A DNA stretch of 32,101 nt from Octopus bimaculoides (taxonomy: Eukaryota): assembly GCF_001194135.2 (NCBI RefSeq), contig NC_068986.1, positions 45,505,857 through 45,537,957 on the forward strand, given 5' to 3'. A model generated the notes under the pieces. It saw only the letters and a list, made by a program, of their open reading frames with translations. It made no database searches and was not told the DNA's origin. This document shows positions 6,712 to 20,936 of this stretch, piece after piece; position 1 is the first letter of the stretch, and each line of letters opens with the position of its first letter. The translations under genes were made by a program, and so were the position numbers.

Positions 6712-6743
<32 letters not shown>

Positions 6744-7090
6744 TGGTATCAATGAAGCGCGTATGGTTTCATGGTGAATCAACTTTTTTTGCATTTGCTC
6801 AACAGCAGATAGAATAATTCGGACATAGTAGCCATATTTCTTAGGCTTGCAAAGAGATGTAAAGCGAGAATTCGGATAGGACCTAATGGTATAAATATAG
6901 AGGATTAATTTAATGGATAAAGGGAGGTAAATATTTAGGGATTATAATAAACTCGGGTCCGTGTGTATTACGTAAGGCTAGAGATTTAATATAACTTATC
7001 TCTCTCTTTTACGAAATCAGCGGCAGTGTGTCGCTAGAAAAAGGATATAGTATTTTGTGAGTGGAATGAGTTCTTCAGCACTAGCCAGTG

Positions 7091-7563
7091 GCTGGAAAAG
7101 AGGACCCTGTCAGCTAGAGTATATGAACAGAGATGGAAGGAAGTGGTGAAAAAGGTGGGTGTGAGTCACCCAAACTAATCATCGGGGAAATAAAAGGCGA
7201 TCTGCAGGGCCTTATAGGCTGCCGAGTTGAAGAATCAATCGTTTTATTATAAAAAATATGTGTGTATGTGTATGTGTGTGTATGTGTGTGTATATATATG
7301 TGTGTGTATGTATATATGTGTATATATGTATATATATATGTGTGTGTGTGTATGTATGTATATGTTTGTCTGTATATTTATAATATAAAAAAAGTGAGAG
7401 GAAAAATTCAACGAAGATATGAACTTTAAATTTTGATATATATATAAAGACAATCGTTAATTTTTAAAGAACATCGAACTCATACATTTTGTATATTTGT
7501 TTATCCTGTATTGTACCCATTTCTATATTTGATCCATAGTGATCCTAATGAAAAATTTTTCAT
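7091..7563 (+). mobile_element. 5'-truncated L1/Tx1-like LINE 3' end with 12-bp TSD
   Basis: TSD cactagccagtg at 7079-7090 and 7564-7575. Begins with LEKRTLSARVYEQRWKEVVKKVGVSHPN*, similar to MEKKYLFRKRWKTVASVLRVNEP at the ORF2 end of the 14855-16935 Tx1 copy. Then an AT-rich UTR with a TA/TG microsatellite. Confidence 0.6.
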
Positions 7564-7579
7564 CACTAGCCAGTGATTA

Positions 7580-7626
7580 ACACACGCTGAAGACGGGTAA
7601 CCACCCAGAAACTCGGGTTCGTGTGT
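7580..7626 (+). ncRNA. Minimal type I hammerhead ribozyme
   Basis: acacacg CTGAAGA c gggt-aacc-accc a GAAA ctcgg GTT cgtgtgt. Perfect 7-bp stem I, 4-bp stem II, near-palindromic stem III (actcgggt). The upstream half-copy has the canonical GTC triplet. Confidence 0.85.
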
Positions 7627-7689
7627 ATCACGTAAAGTTAGAGATGGGAGCGATGGCCGCCCTCGTAAATACTAATCGGCCGCATTCCG

Positions 7690-7940
7690 TTTGTTGGTTC
7701 TCACCTCAGCATTTGACTCATCTTTGCAACGAAAGCAGTGTCCACAGAATTTCAGCCTCCTTTCCTTTATGGTGGAAGTAAACCTTAGAAGAATGCCATG
7801 AAGAACCTGGTTTGTTGTAAGGTATTGGCATTTCATGTTAAGTACTGCTCTCAGAAGTTTTCTGTAGGCTCCATCTAGATTTCTTTCCAGTGTCATAGAG
7901 TCCATGTAGGGCAACCGCATAAGAGCACGGTTTCTATTGT
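7690..7940 (-). mobile_element. RTE-clade LINE fragment (post-RT region)
   Basis: TLERNLDGAYRKLLRAVLNMK..TNQVLHGIL..TIKERRLKFCGHCFR, typical RTE LDG.Y.RMLR..LN / RRL.FAGH motifs. Confidence 0.8.
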
Positions 7941-8209
7941 TGCTCGAAGGTCGTTATGACAATAATAAATACAAGTGCTGATTCAATTTAACTTCTTTAT
8001 TACTATTCAAATGCTTAGTTATTTAACCAACAAACTAATCGATTGTCTGCTTAATCAATAATTCAAGCAATTAATCAGTTGTTTGCCAAAGTTTTTTCGT
8101 CGCCATTTGCAACGTCACCAATGACGTGCATTCTCTACTCTAGGTCAGCCACAAATCTGTCAGTCATCAAGTGAAAATTTATGTAGTTTTATGGTTAAGT
8201 ACGCGAGAA

Positions 8210-8668
8210 GGGGGAGGAGAGAGAGAAAGGGAGAATGCATGTGTGTGTTTTTGCGTGTTCTTGTGTGTTCTTGCGTTCTGGTGTATGCGTGTGGATGTAT
8301 GTTTGTTTGATGTAGTTGGTTCTATCAGGGAGTGCACATTTGCACGTGTGACTGTGAGTGTGCTTTCTTGCATGTGCGTTGTATGTGATGTGTGTGTGTG
8401 TGTGTGTGTGGTGTAGTCGGTTCTATGTGTAAGTGTGTGAGTCAACGTGTGCGTGAGTTTGTATGCTTGTGTACCTTCTGGTGTGTATGTGTGTGTGTGT
8501 GTGTGTGTATAGATGTGTATTATAATTTTTTAATGAATATTCCGTTCCTATTCTGTTATTTGACTTATACCAATCCCGTAAAAAATAGAACAAATTTTAC
8601 TTGTTTTAAAAAAAAAAATTCTATTAGGTTATGCTATTAAGCGTGAGTTCTTGCAAATATACGATCTG

Positions 8669-8725
<57 letters not shown>
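8210..8725. repeat. GT-rich low complexity and (GT)n microsatellites
   Basis: Direct reading. Confidence 0.9.
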
Positions 8726-8729
<4 letters not shown>

Positions 8730-8950
8730 GGTGTGAGCGTGCGCGCGCGTATATACGCGTGCTTGAAATAATTACACTATATAACAAAATTTTAATTTTT
8801 TTTGTCTTTTGTCAATAAGTGTTATCTCATATTTGCTTCTATCAAGAAATGAAGGGAAATGACTAGTGCTTTTGTGACCTAGACATCATGTTTTGAAACT
8901 GACTTATTTTTCATTTCAGACAGATTCAGCGCTGAATTTTTGAAGCAAAC

Positions 8951-9065
8951 TTTTCTAGAATTTCTTAGAAGTTTCAAAGCTTTCGAGAACTTTCTGAAAG
9001 TTTCAAGAATTTCTAGAACATTCTGACAGTATAAATGCAAGGATCGTAAGCTCACGTGTTCAGTT
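8951..9065 (+). promoter_or_regulatory. Heat-shock-element array, TATA box and initiator
   Basis: nGAAn/nTTCn units in 5-bp register from 8982 to 9009 (six units, one mismatch); perfect TTCtaGAAcaTTC at 9011-9023; TATAAAT at 9030-9036; TCAGTT Inr at 9060-9065; AATAAA near 9234. Confidence 0.55.
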
Positions 9066-9299
9066 CACTACAAGGGTAGACAAGTTGTCGTTGAAACCTG
9101 CATTCGTCACAGATGACATCCAGAGGTTTGTAAGCATCCAACAGTCGCATTTTGCTATGTCTGCCGCGAATTTACGAAGACAAGAGCGAAAAGTACTCTC
9201 TGACATGTGTTGAAAGTGATTCTTTGGGGTTTGAATAAAAATCGCAACAAAAACAAAGTTTGAAGGAAATATTAGCCATTTTTCATACTTTCTAGGAGT

Positions 9300-9692
9300 C
9301 ACCCCACCACAGATGGCACTCCGTCGCTTACGACGTCGAGGGTTCCAGTTGATCCGATCAACAGAACAGCCTGCTCGTGAAATTAACGTGCAAGTGACTG
9401 AGCACTCCACAGACACGTGTACCCTTAACGTAGTTCTCTGGGATATTCAGCGTGACACAGTGTGACAAGGCTGACCCTTTGAATTACGGGCACAACAGAA
9501 ACAAGAAGTATGCGTGAGAGAAAGTTGTGGTGAAAGAGTATAGCAGGGTTCGTCACCATCCCCTGCCGGAGCCTCGTGGAGCTTTAGGTGTTTTCGCTCA
9601 ATAAACACTCACAACGCCCGGTCTGGGAATCGAAACCGCGATCCTATGACCGCGAGTCCGCTGCCCTAACCACTAGGCCATTGCGCCTCCAC
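9300..9692 (-). mobile_element. Full-length tRNA-derived SINE family A with 13-bp TSD
   Basis: A box (tggcctagtggttagg) and B box (ggtttcgattccc). TSD actttctaggagt at 9287-9299 and 9693-9705. About 15 extra nt (atctgtggtggggtg) at the 3' end. Confidence 0.95.
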
Positions 9693-9829
9693 ACTTTCTA
9701 GGAGTAAGAAAATAGGAAATAACAGTAGCTACCCGAGGACATAAAGCGTGCTACACAGTGTTAAAGCTGAAACTATAAATATTACAATTATAAATATTCC
9801 ACTTTTAACTTAATAATTCACATAATTCT

Positions 9830-9995
9830 GGTGTAGGAGTGGCTGTGCGGTAAGTAGCTTGCTTACAAACTACATGGTTCTGGGTTCAATCCCACGGCGT
9901 GGCAGCTTAGGCAAGTATCTTCTACTATAGCTTGGGCCTGCCAAAGTCTTGTGAGTGGATTTGGTAGACGGAAACTGAAAGAAGCTCGTCGTATA
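9830..9995 (+). mobile_element. tRNA-derived SINE family E, 5' part with CORE-like segment
   Basis: gtggctgtgcggtaagtagcttgc..gggttcaatcccac..ggcaagtatcttctactatagc..ggatttggtagacggaaactgaaagaagc, then (TA)n. Confidence 0.85.
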
Positions 9996-10050
9996 TATAT
10001 ATATATATATACATATATATTTTTATATACATCATACCGTTACATATATA

Positions 10051-10350
10051 TCTATATATATAAAACTGACAATGTGTGTGTGTGTGTGCGTGTGTCTGTC
10101 TGTCTGTCTGTCTGTATGTGTGCATCACTAAAACTCGAGAACTACTCAACCGATTTCATTCAAATTTTACACATGCCTTACTTAGAGTTCATGTAGTGTC
10201 ATAGGTCAAAAACATTTTCAGCTTCTTGCCTAATACGAGCCCGGAGCAATCTCTTATCTCTTATAGTGTTTCAGTATTACGCGTCAAAAGTGAAACAATA
10301 ACATCTCTATTAATACCTTCACTATTATATGGTTTCAATTTCAATTACTT
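10051..10350 (+). mobile_element. Non-autonomous Helitron-like element, 5' portion
   Basis: Starts a|TCTATATATATAAAA, then a (GT)/(TCTG) microsatellite and aactactcaaccgatttcattcaaatttt, a layout typical of non-autonomous Helitrons. No 3' hairpin-CTAG seen. Confidence 0.55.
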
Positions 10351-10362
10351 TCAATATGTATC

Positions 10363-10397
<35 letters not shown>

Positions 10398-10417
10398 GTG
10401 TATGCATATATCTTTGT

Positions 10418-10455
<38 letters not shown>

Positions 10456-10502
10456 GTGGGTATATATATGTATATATATGTATATATATCTATGTATGTA
10501 TG

Positions 10503-10863
10503 TATAATTATAAGCATATAGAGATCAGCGTGTGGATGCTGATTTTTTCTTATGTGATATTTGATGTTGCATGGTCAGATATGCATGAGTATATTAGCAT
10601 TTTCAGATTTATTATTTTGTATATCATGCTGATGAGTGGAAAATAATTTTATATTCTAATCACGAAACGTCGTACATGATTAACTAACGGCAGGTTTGTT
10701 TTCGTTTATTTTCTCTTCTGTTTTGTTCTATATGTGCCATAAATATCGCCATCTGTTGGAGAAAAAATTGTAGTTAGAATTAGTAGTTCTTTGACTGCTA
10801 TTTCTAAATTTTCAGTATGTTGGTGAAGCAACTCATGCTGATCTCTATATGTTTATAATTATA
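10503..10863. mobile_element. MITE-like element with 30-bp terminal inverted repeats
   Basis: tataattataagcatatagagatcagcgtg (10503-10532) versus catgctgatctctatatgtttataattata (10834-10863), 28/30 complementary. Confidence 0.75.
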
Positions 10864-10962
10864 AATGGCTTACCGATAAAGGTTTTTTTGCATACTGAAC
10901 TACTTGGCAAAATTGTTAATTATTAATTTTATTAACTAATTGGCAATTCCCTGCCCTATATC

Positions 10963-10994
<32 letters not shown>

Positions 10995-11873
10995 TGTATA
11001 TGTATGTGTATGTATGTATATGTATGTAAATGTATGTATACATATGTATATATATGTACAGATATATATGTATATATATNNNNNNNNNNNNNNNNNNNNN
11101 NNNNNNNNNNNNNNNNNNNNNNNNNNNNNNNNNNNNNNNNNNNNNNNNNNNNNNNNNNNNNNNNNNNNNNNNNNNNNNNNNNNNNNNNNNNNNNNNNNNN
11201 NNNNNNNNNNNNNNNNNNNNNNNNNNNNNNNNNNNNNNNNNNNNNNNNNNNNNNNNNNNNNNNNNNNNNNNNNNNNNNNNNNNNNNNNNNNNNNNNNNNN
11301 NNNNNNNNNNNNNNNNNNNNNNNNNNNNNNNNNNNNNNNNNNNNNNNNNNNNNNNNNNNNNNNNNNNNNNNNNNNNNNNNNNNNNNNNNNNNNNNNNNNN
11401 NNNNNNNNNNNNNNNNNNNNNNNNNNNNNNNNNNNNNNNNNNNNNNNNNNNNNNNNNNNNNNNNNNNNNNNNNNNNNNNNNNNNNNNNNNNNNNNNNNNN
11501 NNNNNNNNNNNNNNNNNNNNNNNNNNNNNNNNNNNNNNNNNNNNNNNNNNNNNNNNNNNNNNNNNNNNNNNNNNNNNNNNNNNNNNNNNNNNNNNNNNNN
11601 NNNNNNNNNNNNNNNAAGATTAAGATAGGGTTGCAGTATTTTAAAAATTTACTACCAGTGGCCTAGTATGTATAAAAAATCAAAAGAAAACATATTTTCT
11701 ACATAAGAATGAGTGTACATTTAAACACAAAAGAGGCAACCTTTAACAGGCAATCTTACACACTAGAAAGAACAGTAAAAAAACGTCCAAAACCACATTT
11801 AAGAGCAATTTCGAAGGGAATGAAAAATAAAAACTTTTATCTTGTTAATTTACTGCCAGACCTAGGTTTCAAA

Positions 11874-12600
11874 TTGGAGGTGGTCCCGTTGGAGGTGGTC
11901 CCGTTGGCCATCACTACCTGACATCTATCTTTCAGAAAGTCATGTTACCATTATCCAAGCTTTCCGACTAAGCCAAGGTCACGCAGCTTGTGATATATCG
12001 TACCTTGGCTTTATCAAAGGCTTTTGTAGAGTCAAGCTGTATCACGTCCATATTTGAGTTGTTGAGCAGCTTTTTAAACAACCAGTCTTAGTACTGCAAG
12101 ATCTGTGCCAGTCAGCTTCTACCTGGTCGAATACCGTGATGGTTGTCAGTCAGCAAGTTATTCTCTTCAAGGAATGTAATCAGTTTCCTTCGGACTATTC
12201 GTTCTAGGACTTAGCTGATGTACAAGGTCAGAGAGATAGGCCTATAGTTTTCAGCATCTGCTCAGCTTCCTCCTTTATGAATAGGGCATATTGCCTCATT
12301 CAATTTTGCTCAGGAACTTACCATTGGCAAGGAAGCTCTGAAAAAGAGGCTGCAGTGGTTTTGCAAAGGCTCGTTTGTATGCCTTGAGAAATATTGCTGG
12401 GAATCCATGGGGCCCAGCAACTGAGTTTGCATCTACATCATCTATTGTCAGTATTACATCCTCTTCTATGATGTTGATGAAATCAATTGTTACTGCCACC
12501 CTTTCTACATCTGTAGTGTTAAGAAAACTTCAGGTTTGCTAACTTGTATGTGCCGCAAGGGTGGGGTGTTTCTCTTATCCTCATTGGGTTTCCCGTGAGA
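11874..12600 (-). mobile_element. CR1/L2-group LINE RT fragment
   Basis: SVAGPHGFPAIFLK..FAKPLQPLFQSFL, ENYRPISLT..ERIVRRKLITFLEEN, HGIRPGRSC, LDSTKAFDK, HKLRDLGLVGK..FLKDRCQVVMANGTTS, with stops and frameshifts. Confidence 0.85.
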
Positions 12601-12884: not shown

Positions 12885-13450
12885 TATAGTCAGTAAAACT
12901 TATTTAAATCTGAAATTATACATTCAAATTATTTATATATCTAATATTTAGTAGACATGCCCTTTGCATTTTTCAATGCAAGATCCTATAAAGCATGCTA
13001 CTGATCAGGTGATGAATATTCTCTTACGGAATTTCTTGCCAAGTTTCATGCAGTAATCTCAAAAGATCTGGCTTTGAGGATGCTTTCCTGTTCTTTTTAT
13101 GAAATGTCCTGTCCATTATGCCCCATAGGTGTTCAATAGGGTTCATATCTGGTGACTGGCTTGGTTATGGAAGTTTTTAAATACCATTCTTTTCCAACCG
13201 ACCTTGGATCTTTTTAGCCCTTTGACAAGAAGCCCTGTGACAAGGAGCCACATCTTCCATAAATAAAAAGTCTTCTTTAATTATTTCACCATTGGAGAAG
13301 TTTGGAAGGAGTCCTTTCCGCAATATGAACACATATTTATCTGAGTTTATGTTTCCATCACACTCCACCAGCTCTGAATATCCATTGCTCCAAATTGCTC
13401 CCCAGACCATCACAGAAAAGCTGTCACTTATTTTCTTAACGAAATATTTT
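12885..13450 (-). mobile_element. Tc1-family transposase C-terminal remnant
   Basis: [47 protein letters not shown] (stop at 12941-12943). Confidence 0.9.
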
Positions 13451-13748
13451 CAAACTTGGGACACTGGTAGAATGTGTTATATAAAATATCTTTTACTCTT
13501 AGTGTTATTAAGAAAATTTTATCTTTTTAAAGTTATTTCATGCTAAAATTGTCGTATTTCGGTAATTTCAACCAATCACTGACGTCTATTGAAGTGAAAA
13601 CAATTACTGCTATGGAATGTAAACAACACGTTGTGCGGTGTAATGGGATCTTTTCCCTTGAATAAAATTAGTGCCGTTGTTTGTCTACAACAACTATCGG
13701 TGGTACTGTTATTTATGACATCGTTCGTGCGTTTGTATTGGTTTTAGC

Positions 13749-13810
13749 TTTAGGGTTTTAGGGTTAGGGTTCGGGTTTTAGAGTTAGGGGTCAGGGTTAG
13801 GATTAGGGTT
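13749..13810 (+). repeat. Degenerate (TTAGGG)n interstitial telomere-like tract
   Basis: tttagggttttagggttagggttcgggt..gttaggggtcagggttaggattagggtt. Confidence 0.75.
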
Positions 13811-14666
13811 ATGAGTATTTTTGCCAAAATACAAATTTTTTTTATCTGTTCTATTACACAAAATATACAAGNNNNNNNNNNNNNNNNNNNNNNNNNNNNN
13901 NNNNNNNNNNNNNNNNNNNNNNNNNNNNNNNNNNNNNNNNNNNNNNNNNNNNNNNNNNNNNNNNNNNNNNNNNNNNNNNNNNNNNNNNNNNNNNNNNNNN
14001 NNNNNNNNNNNNNNNNNNNNNNNNNNNNNNNNNNNNNNNNNNNNNNNNNNNNNNNNNNNNNNNNNNNNNNNNNNNNNNNNNNNNNNNNNNNNNNNNNNNN
14101 NNNNNNNNNNNNNNNNNNNNNNNNNNNNNNNNNNNNNNNNNNNNNNNNNNNNNNNNNNNNNNNNNNNNNNNNNNNNNNNNNNNNNNNNNNNNNNNNNNNN
14201 NNNNNNNNNNNNNNNNNNNNNNNNNNNNNNNNNNNNNNNNNNNNNNNNNNNNNNNNNNNNNNNNNNNNNNNNNNNNNNNNNNNNNNNNNNNNNNNNNNNN
14301 NNNNNNNNNNNNNNNNNNNNNNNNNNNNNNNNNNNNNNNNNNNNNNNNNNNNNNNNNNNNNNNNNNNNNNNNNNNNNNNNNNNNNNNNNNNNNNNNNNNN
14401 NNNNNNNNNNNNNNNNNNNNNNNNNNNNNNNNNNNNNNNNNNNNNNNNNNNNNNNNNNNNNNNNNNNNNNNNNNNNNNNNNNNNNNNNNNNNNNNNNNNN
14501 NNNNNNNNNNNNNNNNNNNNNNNNNNNNNNNNNNNNNNNNNNNNNNNNNNNNNNNNNNNNNNNNNNACACACACACACACACACACACACAGACACACAG
14601 ACAGACACACACACATTTGAAAAAATGAATAGAGATGGCTTTTGTGGGGATTCCAGCAAAGAAGAT

Positions 14667-14854: not shown

Positions 14855-16935
14855 CTTCATTAACCATTACGGTGAAGATATGGAGTGGATGACACAAAGA
14901 CAGACAAGTGGTCGGGGGGCAAATGAAACAACAACATGAAGATATACATAATTGAAAAAAAAACAATGATGAATAGTTAGAGAATCAAATGAAAGAACAA
15001 TAATGAAGTGAGGCACGTGACTGACCCCACAAACCACATTCCAGCACTGAATTCCTTGGTAGACTCTTTAATTCCTCGCTTGAACAGGTTCATTCACTCT
15101 CAACACGCTTGCTACAGTCTTCCATCTTTTCCGAAACAGGTATTTCTTCTCCATCCTTATTTTTCTTTTCATGTGGAAAAGGAAAAAATGTTAACCAAAC
15201 AAAGGCTGGAGATGAAAATGCCTGTCACGATCCTTTTCCCTCTCGTCTTCCACATTACCTCCTTCGCGGTAGCTACTACACAGAGGAAACAAGCTTACCT
15301 TTCCTTATTCAAGGGAGACGGCGGAACAATCTTAATTATAGATTCAGTTGACAGTTGTACTCTCCTCAGATGTGACAACACTTGTTCGACATAAACCTAA
15401 AGTTCCGATATCTTTGGACATTGCACAATTGCGTGCAGGACAGTTTCATTGTCTCGCATGCATTTTGGACAAGTTAGTGTAGATGAAGAACCATGCCTAA
15501 AGAGTTTGTACGGAACAGGTAAAGCACTTTTGTAACATTGCCATGCCAGGGACTTTTGGAAATTGTCCAAAGGCCCTGGCACGAATGTTCTTCGGTACAG
15601 GCTGTTGAGTTGACTGTCATAGAAGCCTAGGGTTTTTCTACGGCGTCGTCACACTTGAACTCTACTAACTCTCTATAAAAGGACGAGGTGGAATCCCCGC
15701 CGCCGGCGTTGCTCGCTTGAGAGAGAAGCACGGGAGCCTGATGACACTCTGCTTGCCAAGCTCCCAACTTCGGTCTACGCTTAATCCATGGGTCCAGTTC
15801 AGTAAACGAGGTGAATCGTAGAAACAACAGTCTGACGAACGGAGACCACACCTGCATACCGTCCAGGTAGACCCAGAGGTGACTCAGCCTCAGCGCATGC
15901 CTGTGCATTTTTAGCCACGGCATCCCCAGCCTACCCTTCAGCAATTGTCGGCAACAATTAGAACGTCTTACAAGAGGTCCCCTGCCCCTCCACAAAAAGC
16001 GGAAGAGCATGCGTTCCAACTTGTTCATCCACGAATCGGGGAAAGTCACGGTGATCAGGCGGTAGGTAATAACATGCGATGAACACAACTGCAACCTCCG
16101 CCCCCCCTTTCAGGGATAGCTTCCGCTCAGACCAGGTCTGAGTTAGGAGAGCAACCCTGCTCACCACTGCACTCCAGTTCTTCTCTGTCTGGACCAAACC
16201 AGACCCCTAGCATTTTCACCGGTCCGTCGATTCAGCGACCCACGACGCTGATGGGAGGGATCAACTTGCCCCTGCAGGTGCCGAGTTGTAAGCCGACCGA
16301 TTTATCCCGGTTAATTTTTGCTCCTGCCACAGCTTCGTAATCCCTTAGGGCCTCACCTACGCGCTGTAGGTCTTCGACCCGGGATACGATGACGGTGATG
16401 TCATCCGCATACGCCAAAACCGATTTTTCGAACCCTACATCTCGTGGGATGCCCCTCATAGCCTCCAACTTTTGCAGCAATGACTCGAGAGCCAAAACGT
16501 AGAGAAGTGGAGAGAGAGAGAGAGGACACCTTTGCCGTACCGATCGCTCTATGTAGAACGGTTCCGAAGAAAAACCGTTCACCCGAACAATCGATTCAAT
16601 GTTGCTATACAAAACGGTGATCCAGCCACGGAAGGTTGGGCCAAACCCGGCCGCCACAAGGCGGAAAGGATCGATGGGCCACGCTTTCGCGGTCCGTATT
16701 CGTACGCTTTCGATTAGTCTAAATGGACCATAGCTCCACTCTTGCCAGGAATTCTATCTTCCGTCTCTATGGTATAACCTAGAAGGTAGAGATTATCGTG
16801 AATCGACTTGCTAGGGATGGCGCATGTTTGCGCCTCCCCAACAAGACTATCCACAACCCGCGCCAACCTTTTTTGCTAATACCTTGGGGGCCTAAAATGG
16901 GCCTAAAATTATCAATTACATCCCCCTTGTAGTAA
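14855..16935 (-). mobile_element. L1/Tx1-clade LINE, 5'-truncated and decayed
   Basis: KGDVIDNFRP, KVLAKRLARVVDSLVGEAQTCAIP, SVRQRCPLSLSPLLYVL, AYADDITV, KINRDKS, LFRFLWRG..GRLGMP, CCHC knuckle CPKCMRDNETVLHAIVQC, C-terminus and an AT-rich UTR. The 3' boundary is approximate. Confidence 0.92.
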
Positions 16936-17149: not shown

Positions 17150-18316
17150 TTAGCAAAAAGATCACACAGCAGAAAGTGTGGTAAAGTGTCTCTGAGGATG
17201 TTATTTGTCGGCATGGCTGTATAAAAATTCTGATAAATGACCAAAGAAGAGAATTTGTAAACAGAGTGTCTGCAGAACTACATAAACTGACAGGAACACA
17301 GCAGCACATAACAAGTGCTTCCCTTTCTGTCCTCTCGAATTATGTGGTTGAGGTGGTGTGTTCATCTTTCCAATAAAACCTCTCTAAAATTTTAGCCCGT
17401 GTTCTGTCGACACCAAGATGACTTCCCAAGCAGCGGGCATTATCATTATCTCCCCAGGCCATGTGAATCTACTATAATAATGCTCTTGTGTTTTTCTCCG
17501 TTACAAGATATGAATGAGAAAGCGAATGGCCACGTGGAGCGACAGAATCGCACTATAAAAGATGCTTTTATCAATTCCTTTGAGGACCATGGCAACTGGG
17601 TTGAATGCTTACCAGCAGTTCTGTTTGCGTATCGAACAAACCAAACATTCTTCAACACATTTTACCCAATTTCAAATTTTATACAGCAGGCAAGCTACAC
17701 TTCCAGTTGAGCTACAGCACAACCCAACTGCCAAAGATAAGGACAGTTTTGGAAATGGTCAATCTATATCCATAAAATTGAAGTTATGACAGCTATTCGG
17801 GACTGTATGATTTCTCGAGTTGCCTTCAATATTAGAATAGCTCAGTCTGTTCAAAAGAACAATACGATAGTAAACATGAGCAACAGCAGCTCAGTACTGA
17901 AAATAAAGTTCTACTCAAAAACCTAATTCGAGAACACAGAAAGGGAAGACATTTTATGGAACGCTGCACAGGTCCTTCCACTGTTGCAGAAGTTTGTGGC
18001 AAAAATACTTATCGACTTTCAAATAACAATAAAGTAGTAGAAAAGAACTTAAATGCTACCAACCTCACTCGATATATTGAGCAACCACTAGCAATTGGAA
18101 AACGAAAAGGAAATTACGAAAATCAAAATACCCAAGCTCCAAGTTGAAAAAAAGGAAACCGCAGCGATGTTTTAATGTATATAAATATATTTCATTACCA
18201 ATTTAAAGTGTATAAATAAATTTTGGTTTGTATGTAAAACATTGTTCTTCAAATCAATCTCTTATCGATACATTCTGTCAACTCAATTCAGTCCACTATA
18301 AACAATATCCATCTGC

Positions 18317-19344: not shown

Positions 19345-20902
19345 ATGCATACAACCAAGTGTGTATACCTATATTTATCTAAAGAATCTCATATAGAGGA
19401 TCTTTGGATTGTCTTGCAAATCTTCATCATGCCGCTTCTTTTGCTTGTTCTTCGAAAAATATCTATTTCTAGGTTTTTGTGTAAATCTTTAGGTACGTTG
19501 CCTAATGCACTTATGATGATAGGTACAAATGACGACTCTATAGCCAGAGTACAAGAGCTGCAAGTTCCGTATTAATTCACCATGAATGTTCTCTTCTCCT
19601 GGACTTTTGATGGAACATTCATATCTGCTGGGAAGCAGACCTCTACAACAGTGCATGACTTTTGTCCCCTGTCCCACAGAACAATATCAGAATAATAATT
19701 GGGTGTTTGCACCTAATTGCAGTTTTTATTAAAGTAGTCCACCAGTATCACTTGTTCTTAAAGGTGTGAATACATTCTGGTTCTGACGTGTCTTTGATAT
19801 ACTAATCAAGAGAGTCCGTCTTGCGGATAGCATTGTAAAAAGTCTTTGAAACCATATCATGCTTCAGGAGTAGATAGTGTCTCGTAGACGTTTTGGGACA
19901 GCTGCTGATAACGTGGGTGATATCTTCTACACTAGTATAGCACAGCCAACACTTTCTATCACAACGTGGAGGTGTGGTGGTGTCTCTATCATTCTTGTTT
20001 ATCAGGTATCTCCTGTTCGTGGATAGCGAAGGCATATCCCTCTAAGTGGGATGTAATGTATCTAACACAGTACAAGAGGCTACTCGTACTTTCGATGGTG
20101 CTATTGTCCTCTAGCTTACAGGATGCATTGCTTTTTGCTGATATGGCTCCGAATTTCTATTTAGGTAGGCCAGTCAAACCTCTTTGAGATGCATGAGACA
20201 GTTGTATTCTCAGAACATCTTCTCAGTAGTTCCCCAACCCTGAAGATGTTGCTCTCACTTTTGAGTATGCATGTTGCATGTAATGTTCTCATTTCTTTCT
20301 TTCTGTTTAACATGTGTTGTCCGAGTGATACAATGCAAGATTCAAAGGCTGTCTGGACTGAACTTATACATCTACTGCCTTCTCTTCGTCTCACATAGAT
20401 CCTTTCGATGACATTGTTGATGTGGAAGTTGTTAATGGTGGTCAGTATCTTTCTAATTTTGATATCCAGGCTGCAAATCTCGTCAAGAGTCCAGTCCAGT
20501 ATCCCAAATGTTGACACTAGCACTGGCATTGTGAGATATGCTCTTGTTAAGTGCACACAGCTCTGAGTTCCATATTTTTCAGAGTTTGCAGAAGTACTCT
20601 TTGGTTTTAGTACTTCTGGTTTTAGTCTCAGCACCAAGGTATGCAACGTTCTCGTCGATTCCATGATACTTATTGTTTTTATCATTAGAAGTAGGGGTGA
20701 TAGACAAGCCATTGACAAACATGTTCTCTGTCTGGCTGACAACCCTTCATGTATGAGCATTTATCTTGCCCAAACTCCATTTCTATGTCGCGTGAAAATG
20801 TGACTTGTTCTAATTGTCTCTTGATATTGTTCATATTGCCAGAATATAACTTTAGGTCATCAACAAAAAATGTGAGAGGCATTAATTTTATTCTTGTCTG
20901 CA
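19345..20902 (-). mobile_element. R4/Dong-clade non-LTR retrotransposon with restriction-like endonuclease, 5'-truncated
   Basis: FVDDLKLY (RT), FGQDKC, MPVLVSTFGILDWT..LDIKIRKILT, CCHC CWLC..EDITHVISSC, KHD motif, DIVLWD..CTVVE (RLE), KICKT C-terminus. 5' junction abuts (CATA)n at 20903-20937. Confidence 0.9.
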
Positions 20903-20904
20903 TG

Positions 20905-20936
<32 letters not shown>

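What the first reader, a model, noticed from the sequence alone, without database searches (positions are those of the whole stretch)
6949..7645. Hidden retrozyme-like hammerhead unit of about 175 nt, masked by a nested insertion
Seen: a complete minimal type I hammerhead at 7580-7626 (7-bp stem I, CTGAAGA/GAAA core, near-palindromic stem III), and its 3' half plus tail repeated at 6949-6985 with the canonical GTC site. Removing the TSD-flanked insert gives a cleavage-to-cleavage unit of 175 nt containing small hairpins (agagat/atctct, agcggca/tgtcgct, cact/agtg). Established: metazoan non-LTR retrozymes are non-coding tandem units of roughly 170-400 nt with minimal type I hammerheads that cleave as dimers, produce circular RNAs and are thought to be mobilised by PLEs. 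Inference: this is a cephalopod retrozyme family, which I do not know to be characterised; PLE remnants occur in the same window.
Basis: partly seen in the sequence, partly recalled or inferred. Interest (0 to 1): 0.85.

Follow-up and report, generated by a model that had tools for sequence, protein, structure and literature searches.

The report
Decayed hammerhead-ribozyme retroelement copy
This is a worn-out, interrupted copy, just over one unit long, of a short non-coding mobile element carrying a hammerhead self-cleaving RNA motif; such elements are already known in many animals, so it is a modest addition rather than a discovery.

Summary
A type I hammerhead (HHR) motif sits at 7580-7626 (+). 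Its 3' part plus 26 nt is repeated at 6949-6985 (33/37 identical, with GTC at the cleavage site). A 465-nt block flanked by a 20-nt direct repeat (18/20, 12 exact) splits the unit. Removing the block gives a 175-nt period.

The motif is not chance. My descriptor finds three HHRs in the window, none in 200 shuffles, and 0.008 per descriptor with permuted core boxes.

Caveats:
- Rfam finds no hammerhead, even at E<=10.
- Helix II has a C/A apposition next to the core, and the complete copy has GUU rather than GUC.
- The small hairpins and the unit fold are no better than shuffled sequence.

The HHR runs unbroken across the repeat boundary, so the template must have been periodic: a tandem or circular 175-nt non-coding RNA. 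The 37-nt overhang matches the more-than-unit, "tail" signature of Penelope-like element (PLE) integration. A PLE reverse-transcriptase remnant lies in the window.

This locus has only one complete HHR, is decayed and cannot release a circle. There is no other copy and no tandem array in the window. I could not reach the source genome, so family size, multimers, covariation, circular RNAs and the cephalopod host remain untested. New member of a known kind; low to moderate interest.

The parts
6949..6985 (+). Upstream partial copy. It runs from A13 through the cleavage site (GTC, cut after 6959) plus the first 26 nt of the next unit. It lacks helix I 5' strand, CUGANGA, helix II and G12.
   Evidence: Direct repeat D9, 89% identical to 7609-7645; blastn E 5.7e-9; sequence read.
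6986..7070 (+). Non-ribozyme body of the unit (85 nt). It holds the hairpins AGAGAT/ATCTCT (6980-7003) and AGCGGCA/TGTCGCT (7019-7035).
   Evidence: Read. The hairpins appear in the MFE fold, but the fold is not better than shuffles.
7071..7090 (+). Left copy of the 20-nt duplication (TTCTTCAGCACTAGCCAGTG); part of the unit.
   Evidence: D7: 18/20 identical to 7556-7575, with 12 exact.
7091..7555 (.). Nested 465-nt insertion of unknown identity, holding a TG/TA microsatellite at 7256-7381.
   Evidence: Flanked by the 20-nt repeat. No other copy of its unique parts is in the window. A resemblance of its start to a LINE C-terminus is not significant.
7556..7575 (+). Right copy of the 20-nt duplication (TTTTTCATCACTAGCCAGTG).
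   Evidence: D7.
7580..7626 (+). Complete type I hammerhead motif. Helix I 7580-7586 / 7620-7626. CUGAAGA 7587-7593. Helix II 7595-7598 / 7603-7606 with loop AACC, flanked by unpaired C7594 and A7607. GAAA 7608-7611. Helix III A7611-U7618 and C7612-G7617 with loop UCGG. U17 at 7619, with the predicted cut after 7619.
   Evidence: descriptor and controls; helix I and helix II appear in the MFE; dimer with intermolecular helix III. Rfam gives no hit.
7627..7645 (+). Last 19 nt of the element. Homology to the upstream copy stops at 7645, at the junction between the 5' arm and the loop of the AGAGAT hairpin. This is the inferred start point of reverse transcription.
   Evidence: Repeat D9 ends at 7645. 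The mechanism is inferred from PMC11167929.
7646..7953 (-). Neighbour, not part of the element. It is the C-terminal coding fragment of a LINE, cut on its 3' side at about the GRP motif, exactly where the HHR element ends.
   Evidence: 1425 homologues. The homologues continue about 40 residues beyond GRP. A profile of those tails matches nothing below 7646 or in 6712-6948.

Best explanation
The stretch 6949-7645 is an old, inert DNA copy, 212 nt long before interruption. It derives from a short non-coding RNA with a period of 175 nt, each period carrying one type I hammerhead.

The copy covers 1.2 periods. It starts 11 nt before one cleavage site, runs through a whole unit, and ends 26 nt after the next cleavage site.

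The most likely origin is reverse transcription by a Penelope-like element (PLE) enzyme. The template would be an uncleaved multimeric or circular transcript of a PLE-dependent non-autonomous element, that is, a non-LTR retrozyme or pLTR-derived element. Synthesis would start internally, downstream of the ribozyme, and stop early at the 5' side.

Later a 465-nt element inserted into the unit and duplicated 12-20 nt of it. Point mutations then accumulated: C17 to U, and possibly a CpG-to-CpA change at the base of helix II.

Shown here: the motif, the repeats, the period, the absence of coding capacity, the continuity of the ribozyme across the repeat boundary, and a PLE remnant in the window. 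Inferred: the RNA template, the PLE enzyme, the order of events, and any past self-cleavage. Today the locus has one complete ribozyme and cannot excise a unit-length RNA.
For: - HHR motif with controls: 3 hits in the window against 0 in 200 shuffles and 0.008 per decoy descriptor.
- 37-nt repeat at 660-nt spacing (D9).
- 20-nt duplication bracketing 465 nt (D7), which gives the 175-nt period.
- Helix I 5' strand and G12 lie left of 7609, while A13 through helix I 3' strand lie in the repeated block. The repeat is therefore part of the unit and not a target duplication.
- Helix III region ACUCGGGU self-pairs, and two copies cofold 6.3 kcal/mol better than two monomers. This is the dimer-dependent type described for animal HHRs (PMC4209133, PMC7229834).
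- There is no ORF and no RT or endonuclease similarity in or next to the element.
- A PLE RT N-terminal remnant lies at 2293->1784 (-), E 2e-18 to an RT + GIY-YIG element that itself carries a min-HHR about 80 nt after its ORF.
- PLE insertions are typically more-than-unit partial tandems with a 30-40 bp 'tail' (PMC8557442). A purified PLE enzyme starts reverse transcription internally, in a stem-loop downstream of the HHR, on unprocessed RNA (PMC11167929). Here the overhang is 37 nt and the end falls in a stem-loop 26 nt past the cut site.
- Retrozyme monomers are common, and retrozymes are related to PLE pLTRs (bioRxiv 10.64898/2026.07.22.740005).
- An extra C follows A9, as in the PLE min-HHR consensus and in the L002 element (PMC4209133).
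Against: - There is only one locus: no second copy in 27.5 kb of non-gap sequence and no tandem array.
- No hammerhead is called by Rfam at any threshold tried.
- An unpaired C7594/A7607 sits where G10.1-C11.1 should abut the core. The RNA may never have cleaved well, or this copy is mutated.
- The unit is not 'highly self-paired' as published retrozyme circles are (z about -0.6).
- No target-site duplication of the whole element was found.
- The right end abuts a LINE that is cut on its 3' side, and the missing LINE part is not on the left. The junctions therefore do not look like a clean simple insertion.
- The left flank is only 237 nt before an assembly gap.
Confidence: 0.6

Rival explanations
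1. This is the terminal fragment (solo pseudo-LTR or heavily 5'-truncated copy) of an autonomous or internally deleted PLE, not a member of a separate retrozyme family. The 37-nt redundancy is then the ordinary PLE partial tandem or 'tail'.
For: - HHRs are universal in canonical PLE pLTRs, and most genomic copies are single motifs from truncated PLEs (PMC4209133).
- The extra nucleotide after A9 is a PLE-HHR trait (PMC4209133).
- A PLE remnant lies in the window.
- The tail length of 30-40 bp matches (PMC8557442).
Against: - The period implied by the repeat is 175 nt (660 nt uninterrupted) and contains no ORF or RT/endonuclease remnant. A PLE partial tandem would have a period of several kb.
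- Helix sizes (7, 4 and 2 bp, with a 4-nt loop 3) are closer to the 'canonical' animal type I HHR than to the min-HHR with long helix II and no helix III (PMC4209133).
- If retrozymes are PLE derivatives, as the 2026 preprint argues, this rival differs from the best explanation only in degree.
Confidence: 0.22
2. This is the remnant of a once longer head-to-tail array (retrozyme array or HHR satellite) that was trimmed on both sides by later insertions and deletions.
For: - Published retrozymes are arrays of 2 to more than 60 units (PMC7229834).
- The right boundary coincides with a broken LINE, so rearrangement happened there.
- An assembly gap lies 237 nt to the left.
Against: - Nothing resembling the unit continues on either side within the contig 6712-11079.
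- The sequence left of 6949 is unrelated, and TRF finds no array.
Confidence: 0.12
3. The hammerhead-like motif is a chance match inside an unrelated local duplication.
For: - Rfam gives no hit.
- Folding energy is not different from shuffles.
- The base of helix II is non-canonical.
Against: - Both core boxes, a 7-bp helix I, a 4-bp helix II and a self-pairing helix III occur together.
- There are 0 hits in 200 shuffles, and 0.008 hits per decoy descriptor against 3 real hits in the same window.
- The other two motifs share the same architecture.
Confidence: 0.04

Closest known systems
Metazoan non-LTR retrozymes (Cervera & de la Pena 2020, PMC7229834; Li, Clavereau & Pollet 2026 preprint)
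   Same: - A non-coding unit carrying one type I HHR.
- Inferred unit of 175 nt, within the published 170-400 nt (51-972 nt in the preprint).
- GC 42% (<50%).
- An HHR whose short helix III needs a partner copy.
- Co-occurrence with PLEs.
- Monomeric derivatives are known to be common.
   Different: - This locus has 1.2 units and one complete HHR, not a tandem of complete units.
- The predicted RNA is not unusually self-paired.
- Copy number and circular RNAs are unknown.
- No flanking target duplication was seen.
- In invertebrates the published retrozyme HHRs cleave efficiently as monomers, whereas this one looks dimer-dependent like the amphibian ones.
Minimal hammerheads in pseudo-LTRs of Penelope-like elements (Cervera & de la Pena 2014, PMC4209133; Frangieh et al. 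2024, PMC11167929)
   Same: - An extra nucleotide after A9.
- A palindromic helix III region.
- A more-than-unit copy with a 30-40 nt terminal extension.
- The end of the copy lies in a stem-loop shortly downstream of the ribozyme.
- A PLE remnant lies in the same window.
   Different: - No RT/GIY-YIG coding sequence is adjacent.
- The period is 175 nt rather than kilobases.
- Helix II is 4 bp (PLE min-HHRs often have 6-8) and a small helix III with a loop is present.
- There is an additional unpaired A between helix II and G12.
HHR-bearing SINE-like and satellite repeats (Schistosoma Sm-alpha, newt satellite 2), as cited in PMC4209133
   Same: A short dispersed or tandem non-coding repeat carrying a type I HHR that works as a dimer.
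   Different: There is no sequence relationship. No pol III promoter features or tRNA-like part were detected (Rfam scan). The copy number here is unknown.

Membership tests
Hammerhead ribozyme, type I | Conserved core C3 U4 G5 A6 N7 G8 A9 and G12 A13 A14 | tested here: met
   CTGAAGA at 7587-7593 and GAA at 7608-7610.
Hammerhead ribozyme, type I | A15.1-U16.1 pair and a non-G nucleotide at position 17 | tested here: met
   A7611-T7618. Position 17 is T7619 (GUU). The partial copy has C6959 (GUC).
Hammerhead ribozyme, type I | Three helices, with helix I open and helices II and III closed | tested here: met
   Helix I is 7 bp, helix II is 4 bp with loop AACC, and helix III is 2 bp with loop UCGG. 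In a dimer, helix III extends to 8-10 bp.
Hammerhead ribozyme, type I | G10.1-C11.1 pair directly abutting A9 and G12 | tested here: inconclusive
   C7594 and A7607 are unpaired at that place. If C7594 is the extra nucleotide typical of PLE HHRs, then G7595-C7606 is 10.1-11.1 but A7607 is surplus. The HHR at 1329-1275 (-) shows the same layout (A...C).
Hammerhead ribozyme, type I | Recognised by the curated covariance models (Rfam hammerhead families) | tested here: not met
   No hammerhead match at gathering score or at E<=10, including a 131-nt slice.
Hammerhead ribozyme, type I | Self-cleavage | not testable with these tools
   This needs in vitro transcription of monomer and dimer constructs.
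Metazoan non-LTR retrozyme | Head-to-tail repeats with a type I HHR in every unit (two or more) | tested here: not met
   There is one complete HHR plus a fragment starting at A13. TRF finds no array of period 100-500 in the window.
Metazoan non-LTR retrozyme | Short non-coding unit (about 170-400 nt) with GC below 50% | tested here: met
   175 nt after removing the nested insertion. The longest open frame is 49 codons. GC is 42%.
Metazoan non-LTR retrozyme | Many copies in the genome, including monomers and multimers | not testable with these tools
   There is no other copy in the window. Pattern scans of the metagenome, prokaryote-genome and viral collections found nothing, and those collections do not hold the source genome.
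Metazoan non-LTR retrozyme | Stable, highly self-paired predicted circular RNA | tested here: inconclusive
   The circular MFE is -37.2 kcal/mol with 63% of bases paired and z -0.61 against dinucleotide shuffles. This is one decayed copy, not a consensus.
Metazoan non-LTR retrozyme | Expression as linear and circular RNA of unit length | not testable with these tools
   No transcriptome data are available.
Penelope-like element (autonomous), pseudo-LTR | HHR-bearing repeat flanking an RT + GIY-YIG ORF | tested here: not met
   tblastn with a complete PLE (L002) hits only 2293->1784 (-) and nothing near 6949-7645. The nearest neighbour on the right is a LINE on the other strand.
Penelope-like element (autonomous), pseudo-LTR | More-than-unit insertion with a 30-40 bp 'tail' | tested here: met
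   There is a 37-nt terminal redundancy (D9). The feature is as described in PMC8557442 and PMC11167929.

The most novel reading that the evidence does not exclude
The copy is a fossil of an undescribed retrozyme family in a cephalopod (or whatever the host is). Its 175-nt unit would be at the small end of the published range for this class. Intact tandem members elsewhere in the genome would still produce abundant circular RNAs using PLE machinery. The unpaired A/C apposition at the base of helix II, seen in two independent HHRs of this window, would be a lineage-specific variant of the hammerhead core rather than decay.
Probability: 0.2. Interest if true: 0.5.

Novelty: new member of a known kind. 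Interest (0 to 1): 0.3.

Why it matters
If the family is real and has intact members, it would extend ribozyme-made circular RNAs and PLE-dependent non-autonomous elements to a lineage where the repeat annotations I could read list Penelope elements and hundreds of unclassified SINE-like families but never mention hammerheads (PMC13282606, PMC8967140). No paper in the library links retrozymes with cephalopods. It might explain part of that unclassified fraction. By itself, this locus is a dead copy of a class described between 2014 and 2020 and changes nothing conceptually.

Tried and rejected
- **Rfam scans.** I scanned at gathering score, at E<=10 on the whole window, and on a 131-nt slice. 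No hammerhead was reported; the only hits were microsatellite-driven miRNA false positives.
- **Other copies in the window.** blastn of the unit against the window found none. A one-mismatch descriptor found no further HHR.
- **External DNA scans.** Two HHR/unit patterns in metagenome contigs, one in prokaryote genomes and one in viral contigs all gave 0 matches.
- **Exact-protein look-ups.** Two window ORFs were looked up to reach the source genome; neither is on record.
- **Pfam.** Six-frame ORF pieces around the HHRs gave only one zf-RVT hit elsewhere. Pfam does not see the PLE N-terminal fragment.
- **Idea: the HHR is the antisense of the LINE C-terminal coding region.** Long tblastn alignments ran through it. 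Rejected: a profile of homologue tails gives no signal past GRP, with 417 of 1000 shuffles scoring at least as well.
- **Idea: the HHR element inserted cleanly into the LINE.** Not supported: the missing LINE tail is not in 6712-6948.
- **Idea: the nested insert is a 5'-truncated LINE** ('YMNRDGRKW'). Not significant: 289 of 2000 shuffles score at least as well.
- **Idea: the 37-nt repeat is a target-site duplication.** Rejected because the ribozyme is continuous across its boundary.
- **Related loci L001 and L002.** They share almost no DNA with the window, so they could not serve as a sample of the source genome.
- **Third protein search, not run.** I ran no further search on the 49-codon antisense frame of the unit, because the odds that such a frame was ever called as a protein in a related genome are very low.

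Full report
**What is in the sequence**

The window is a gap-rich scaffold with seven runs of N. The finding lies in the contig 6712-11079.

At 7580-7626 on the + strand the sequence reads ACACACG CTGAAGA C GGGT AACC ACCC A GAAA C TCGG G T T CGTGTGT. This has the following hammerhead features:
- both conserved boxes, CUGANGA and GAAA;
- a 7-bp helix I;
- a 4-bp helix II closed by AACC;
- the A15.1-U16.1 pair with a second pair (C-G) closing UCGG;
- U at position 17.

The stretch ACUCGGGU can pair with itself (8 bp, two of them G.U). This is the hallmark of animal type I hammerheads that act as dimers (PMC4209133).

I wrote a descriptor requiring both boxes, helix II of at least 3 bp, 15.1-16.1 and 15.2-16.2 pairs, H17, and helix I of at least 5 bp.
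- It finds this motif and two more: 10623-10680 (+) and 1329-1275 (-).
- It finds none in 200 shuffles of the window.
- 240 descriptors with permuted boxes, run on the real sequence, give a mean of 0.008 hits.
- Allowing one core mismatch adds nothing.

The motif is therefore not chance, and this genome carries hammerheads.

**Repeats and period**

The block 7609-7645 (A13 through helix I 3' strand plus 19 nt) recurs at 6949-6985. 33 of 37 positions match and all four differences are transitions. The upstream copy has GTC at the cleavage triplet (D9, E 5.7e-9).

A second, nested direct repeat is 20 nt long (18/20 identical, 12 exact): 7071-7090 and 7556-7575 (D7). It brackets 465 nt that include a TG/TA microsatellite.

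The reconstructed unit folds no better than shuffled sequence, whether linear (z -0.63) or circular (-37.2 kcal/mol, 63% paired, z -0.61).

**Caveats on the ribozyme**

- Rfam reports no hammerhead at gathering score, at E<=10 over the window, or on a 131-nt slice. None of the three motifs is recognised, so the models seem blind to this short-helix-III type. The fact remains that no curated model supports the call.
- C7594 and A7607 face each other unpaired where G10.1-C11.1 normally abuts the core.
- An extra nucleotide after A9 is a conserved trait of PLE hammerheads (PMC4209133). It is also seen in the PLE of locus L002: CTGATGA C GGG...CCC GAAAC. The surplus A before G12 is not part of that consensus.
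- The HHR at 1329-1275 has the mirror arrangement (A...C). This may be a lineage trait, or decay such as CpG to CpA at 7606-7607. I cannot tell from one copy.
- GUU at 7617-7619 is still a permitted triplet by the NUH rule (established knowledge). 'Restoring GTC' is therefore not strictly required.
- As a monomer the RNA prefers an alternative pairing of CUGA with UCGG. Two copies cofold at -35.3 against 2 x -14.5 kcal/mol, with an intermolecular AACUCGGGUU helix.

**What the architecture means**

Helix I 5' strand, the CUGAAGA box, helix II and G12 lie left of 7609. A13 to helix I 3' strand lie inside the repeated block. The ribozyme is thus seamless across the repeat boundary.

The 37-nt repeat therefore cannot be a target-site duplication created around an unrelated insert. 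The DNA must have been copied from a template in which the same sequence recurred every 175 nt (660 nt if the inner block is not an insertion). That template was a head-to-tail multimer or a circle.

The copy is 1.2 periods long. It starts 11 nt before one cut site and ends 26 nt after the next.

It contains no open frame longer than 49 codons. It has no similarity to PLE reverse transcriptase or GIY-YIG endonuclease.

This is the layout expected for a PLE-type retrocopy:
- PLE insertions are 5'-truncated, more-than-unit partial tandems with a 30-40 bp 'tail' (PMC8557442).
- A purified PLE enzyme starts reverse transcription internally, in a stem-loop downstream of the hammerhead, on unprocessed RNA (PMC11167929).

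Here the overhang is 37 nt. The copy ends at the junction between the 5' arm and the loop of the AGAGAT/ATCTCT hairpin, 26 nt after the cut site. The correspondence is suggestive, not proof.

**PLE in the window**

On the minus strand, 2293->1784 encodes a frameshifted fragment (IKPANKGG..., LPKIHK...PIVS, DIKSLYT).
- Its relatives are about 47% identical.
- It aligns (E 2e-18) with an element in L002 that has RT plus a GIY-YIG domain (IYIGETGR) and a minimal hammerhead about 80 nt after its stop codon.

The 1329-1275 hammerhead lies downstream of that remnant on the same strand.

**Surroundings of the element**

Immediately right of 7645, on the minus strand, is the C-terminal coding part of a LINE (7953->~7651). 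It has 1425 homologues, for example the 825-residue P0025. Homologues continue about 40 residues beyond the GRP motif.

A profile of those tails matches nothing beyond the junction: 417 of 1000 shuffles score at least as well. It also matches nothing in the 237 nt left of 6949.

The LINE is therefore broken on its 3' side exactly at the element's end, and the missing part is not on the other side. The junction is real, but the history was not a clean simple insertion. I found no target duplication for the whole element. An assembly gap starts 237 nt to the left.

**What could not be tested**

- The unit has no other copy in the window. TRF finds no array of period 100-500.
Exact look-ups of two window ORFs failed. 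Pattern scans of the metagenome, prokaryote-genome and viral collections returned nothing.
- Copy number, multimers, covariation, association with coding PLEs and circular RNAs remain open.
- The host is also unverified. The only named relative of a LINE RT in the window is from the cuttlefish Acanthosepion pharaonis, at 51% identity.

**Comparison with what is known**

Type I hammerheads in short animal repeats, their expression as circles (non-LTR retrozymes), and minimal hammerheads in PLE pseudo-LTRs are established (PMC4209133, PMC7229834). A 2026 preprint argues that retrozymes are non-autonomous PLE derivatives and that monomeric copies are common (10.64898/2026.07.22.740005).

The present element works like these. 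As a locus it fails the defining tandem criterion, having one complete ribozyme.

In the library I found no paper that links retrozymes or hammerheads with cephalopods. Cephalopod repeat surveys list Penelope elements and many unclassified SINE-like families without mentioning ribozymes. The class is, however, reported 'from molluscs to arthropods'.

**Verdict**

- Observation: confirmed.
- Interpretation: partly supported.
- Best reading (0.6): a decayed, interrupted 1.2-unit retrocopy of a 175-nt hammerhead-bearing, PLE-dependent non-autonomous element, now inert.
- Rivals: terminal fragment of a PLE (0.22), trimmed remnant of a longer array (0.12), chance (0.04).
- Novelty: new member of a known kind.
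- Interest: 0.3.

Noticed in passing
window 10623-10680 (+), with 10500-10532 / 10834-10866: A second minimal type I hammerhead: ATCATG CTGATGA G-TGG...TCA-C GAAAC GTC GTA|CATGAT, with a canonical G10.1-C11.1. It lies inside a ~367-nt segment bounded by 33-nt inverted repeats (91% complementary). That segment is itself embedded between two (TATG)n microsatellites (10354-10505 and 10957-11079). It could be an HHR element with inverted ends, or an inverted PLE-type partial copy inserted in a microsatellite.
   Followed up: partly
window 1329-1275 (-), and 1243-1181 / 899-837 (-): A third hammerhead: TCATA CTGATGA A-GGTT...AACC-C GAAA CCATGG TA|TATGA, with a perfect palindrome ACCATGGT and an A/C apposition at the base of helix II. 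It is followed on the same strand by a 63-nt direct repeat (95% identical) at 344-nt spacing, which again gives a 'unit plus terminal redundancy' layout.
   Followed up: partly
window 2293-1784 (-): A frameshifted N-terminal fragment of a Penelope-like element reverse transcriptase (IKPANKGG, LPKIHK..PIVS, DIKSLYT). It is about 47% identical to ENA proteins and to a Saccoglossus kowalevskii protein. tblastn E is 2e-18 to an RT + GIY-YIG element in L002. A 34-nt x 3 tandem repeat follows at 1662-1770.
   Followed up: yes
window 7646-7953 (-): A LINE C-terminal coding fragment with one in-frame stop. It is cut on its 3' side at the GRP motif, exactly at the end of the hammerhead element. The missing roughly 40 codons and 3' UTR were not found nearby.
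   Followed up: yes
window 13740-13811: A degenerate interstitial (TTAGGG)n-like run of about 8.5 copies, next to the assembly gap at 13872.
   Followed up: no
window 12299-12529 (-), 13180-13449 (-), 15400-16753 (-), 17396-17707 (+), 20164-20936 (-): The window is a mosaic of decayed transposon fragments. By eye these are LINE RT pieces, a Tc1/mariner-like DDE fragment and a gypsy-like integrase fragment. One LINE RT piece (16235-16753) was searched, and its best named hit is Acanthosepion pharaonis at 51% identity. The window is also rich in TG/TATG microsatellites and has seven assembly gaps.
   Followed up: partly
L002 16761-16796 (+): A textbook PLE min-HHR (TCCA CTGATGA C GGG CACAGT CCC GAAAC GTC TGGA) lies about 80 nt after the stop of an RT + GIY-YIG ORF. 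It is on a long contig of an ENA 'metagenome' assembly (ERZ25067546) that is evidently animal host DNA.
   Followed up: partly
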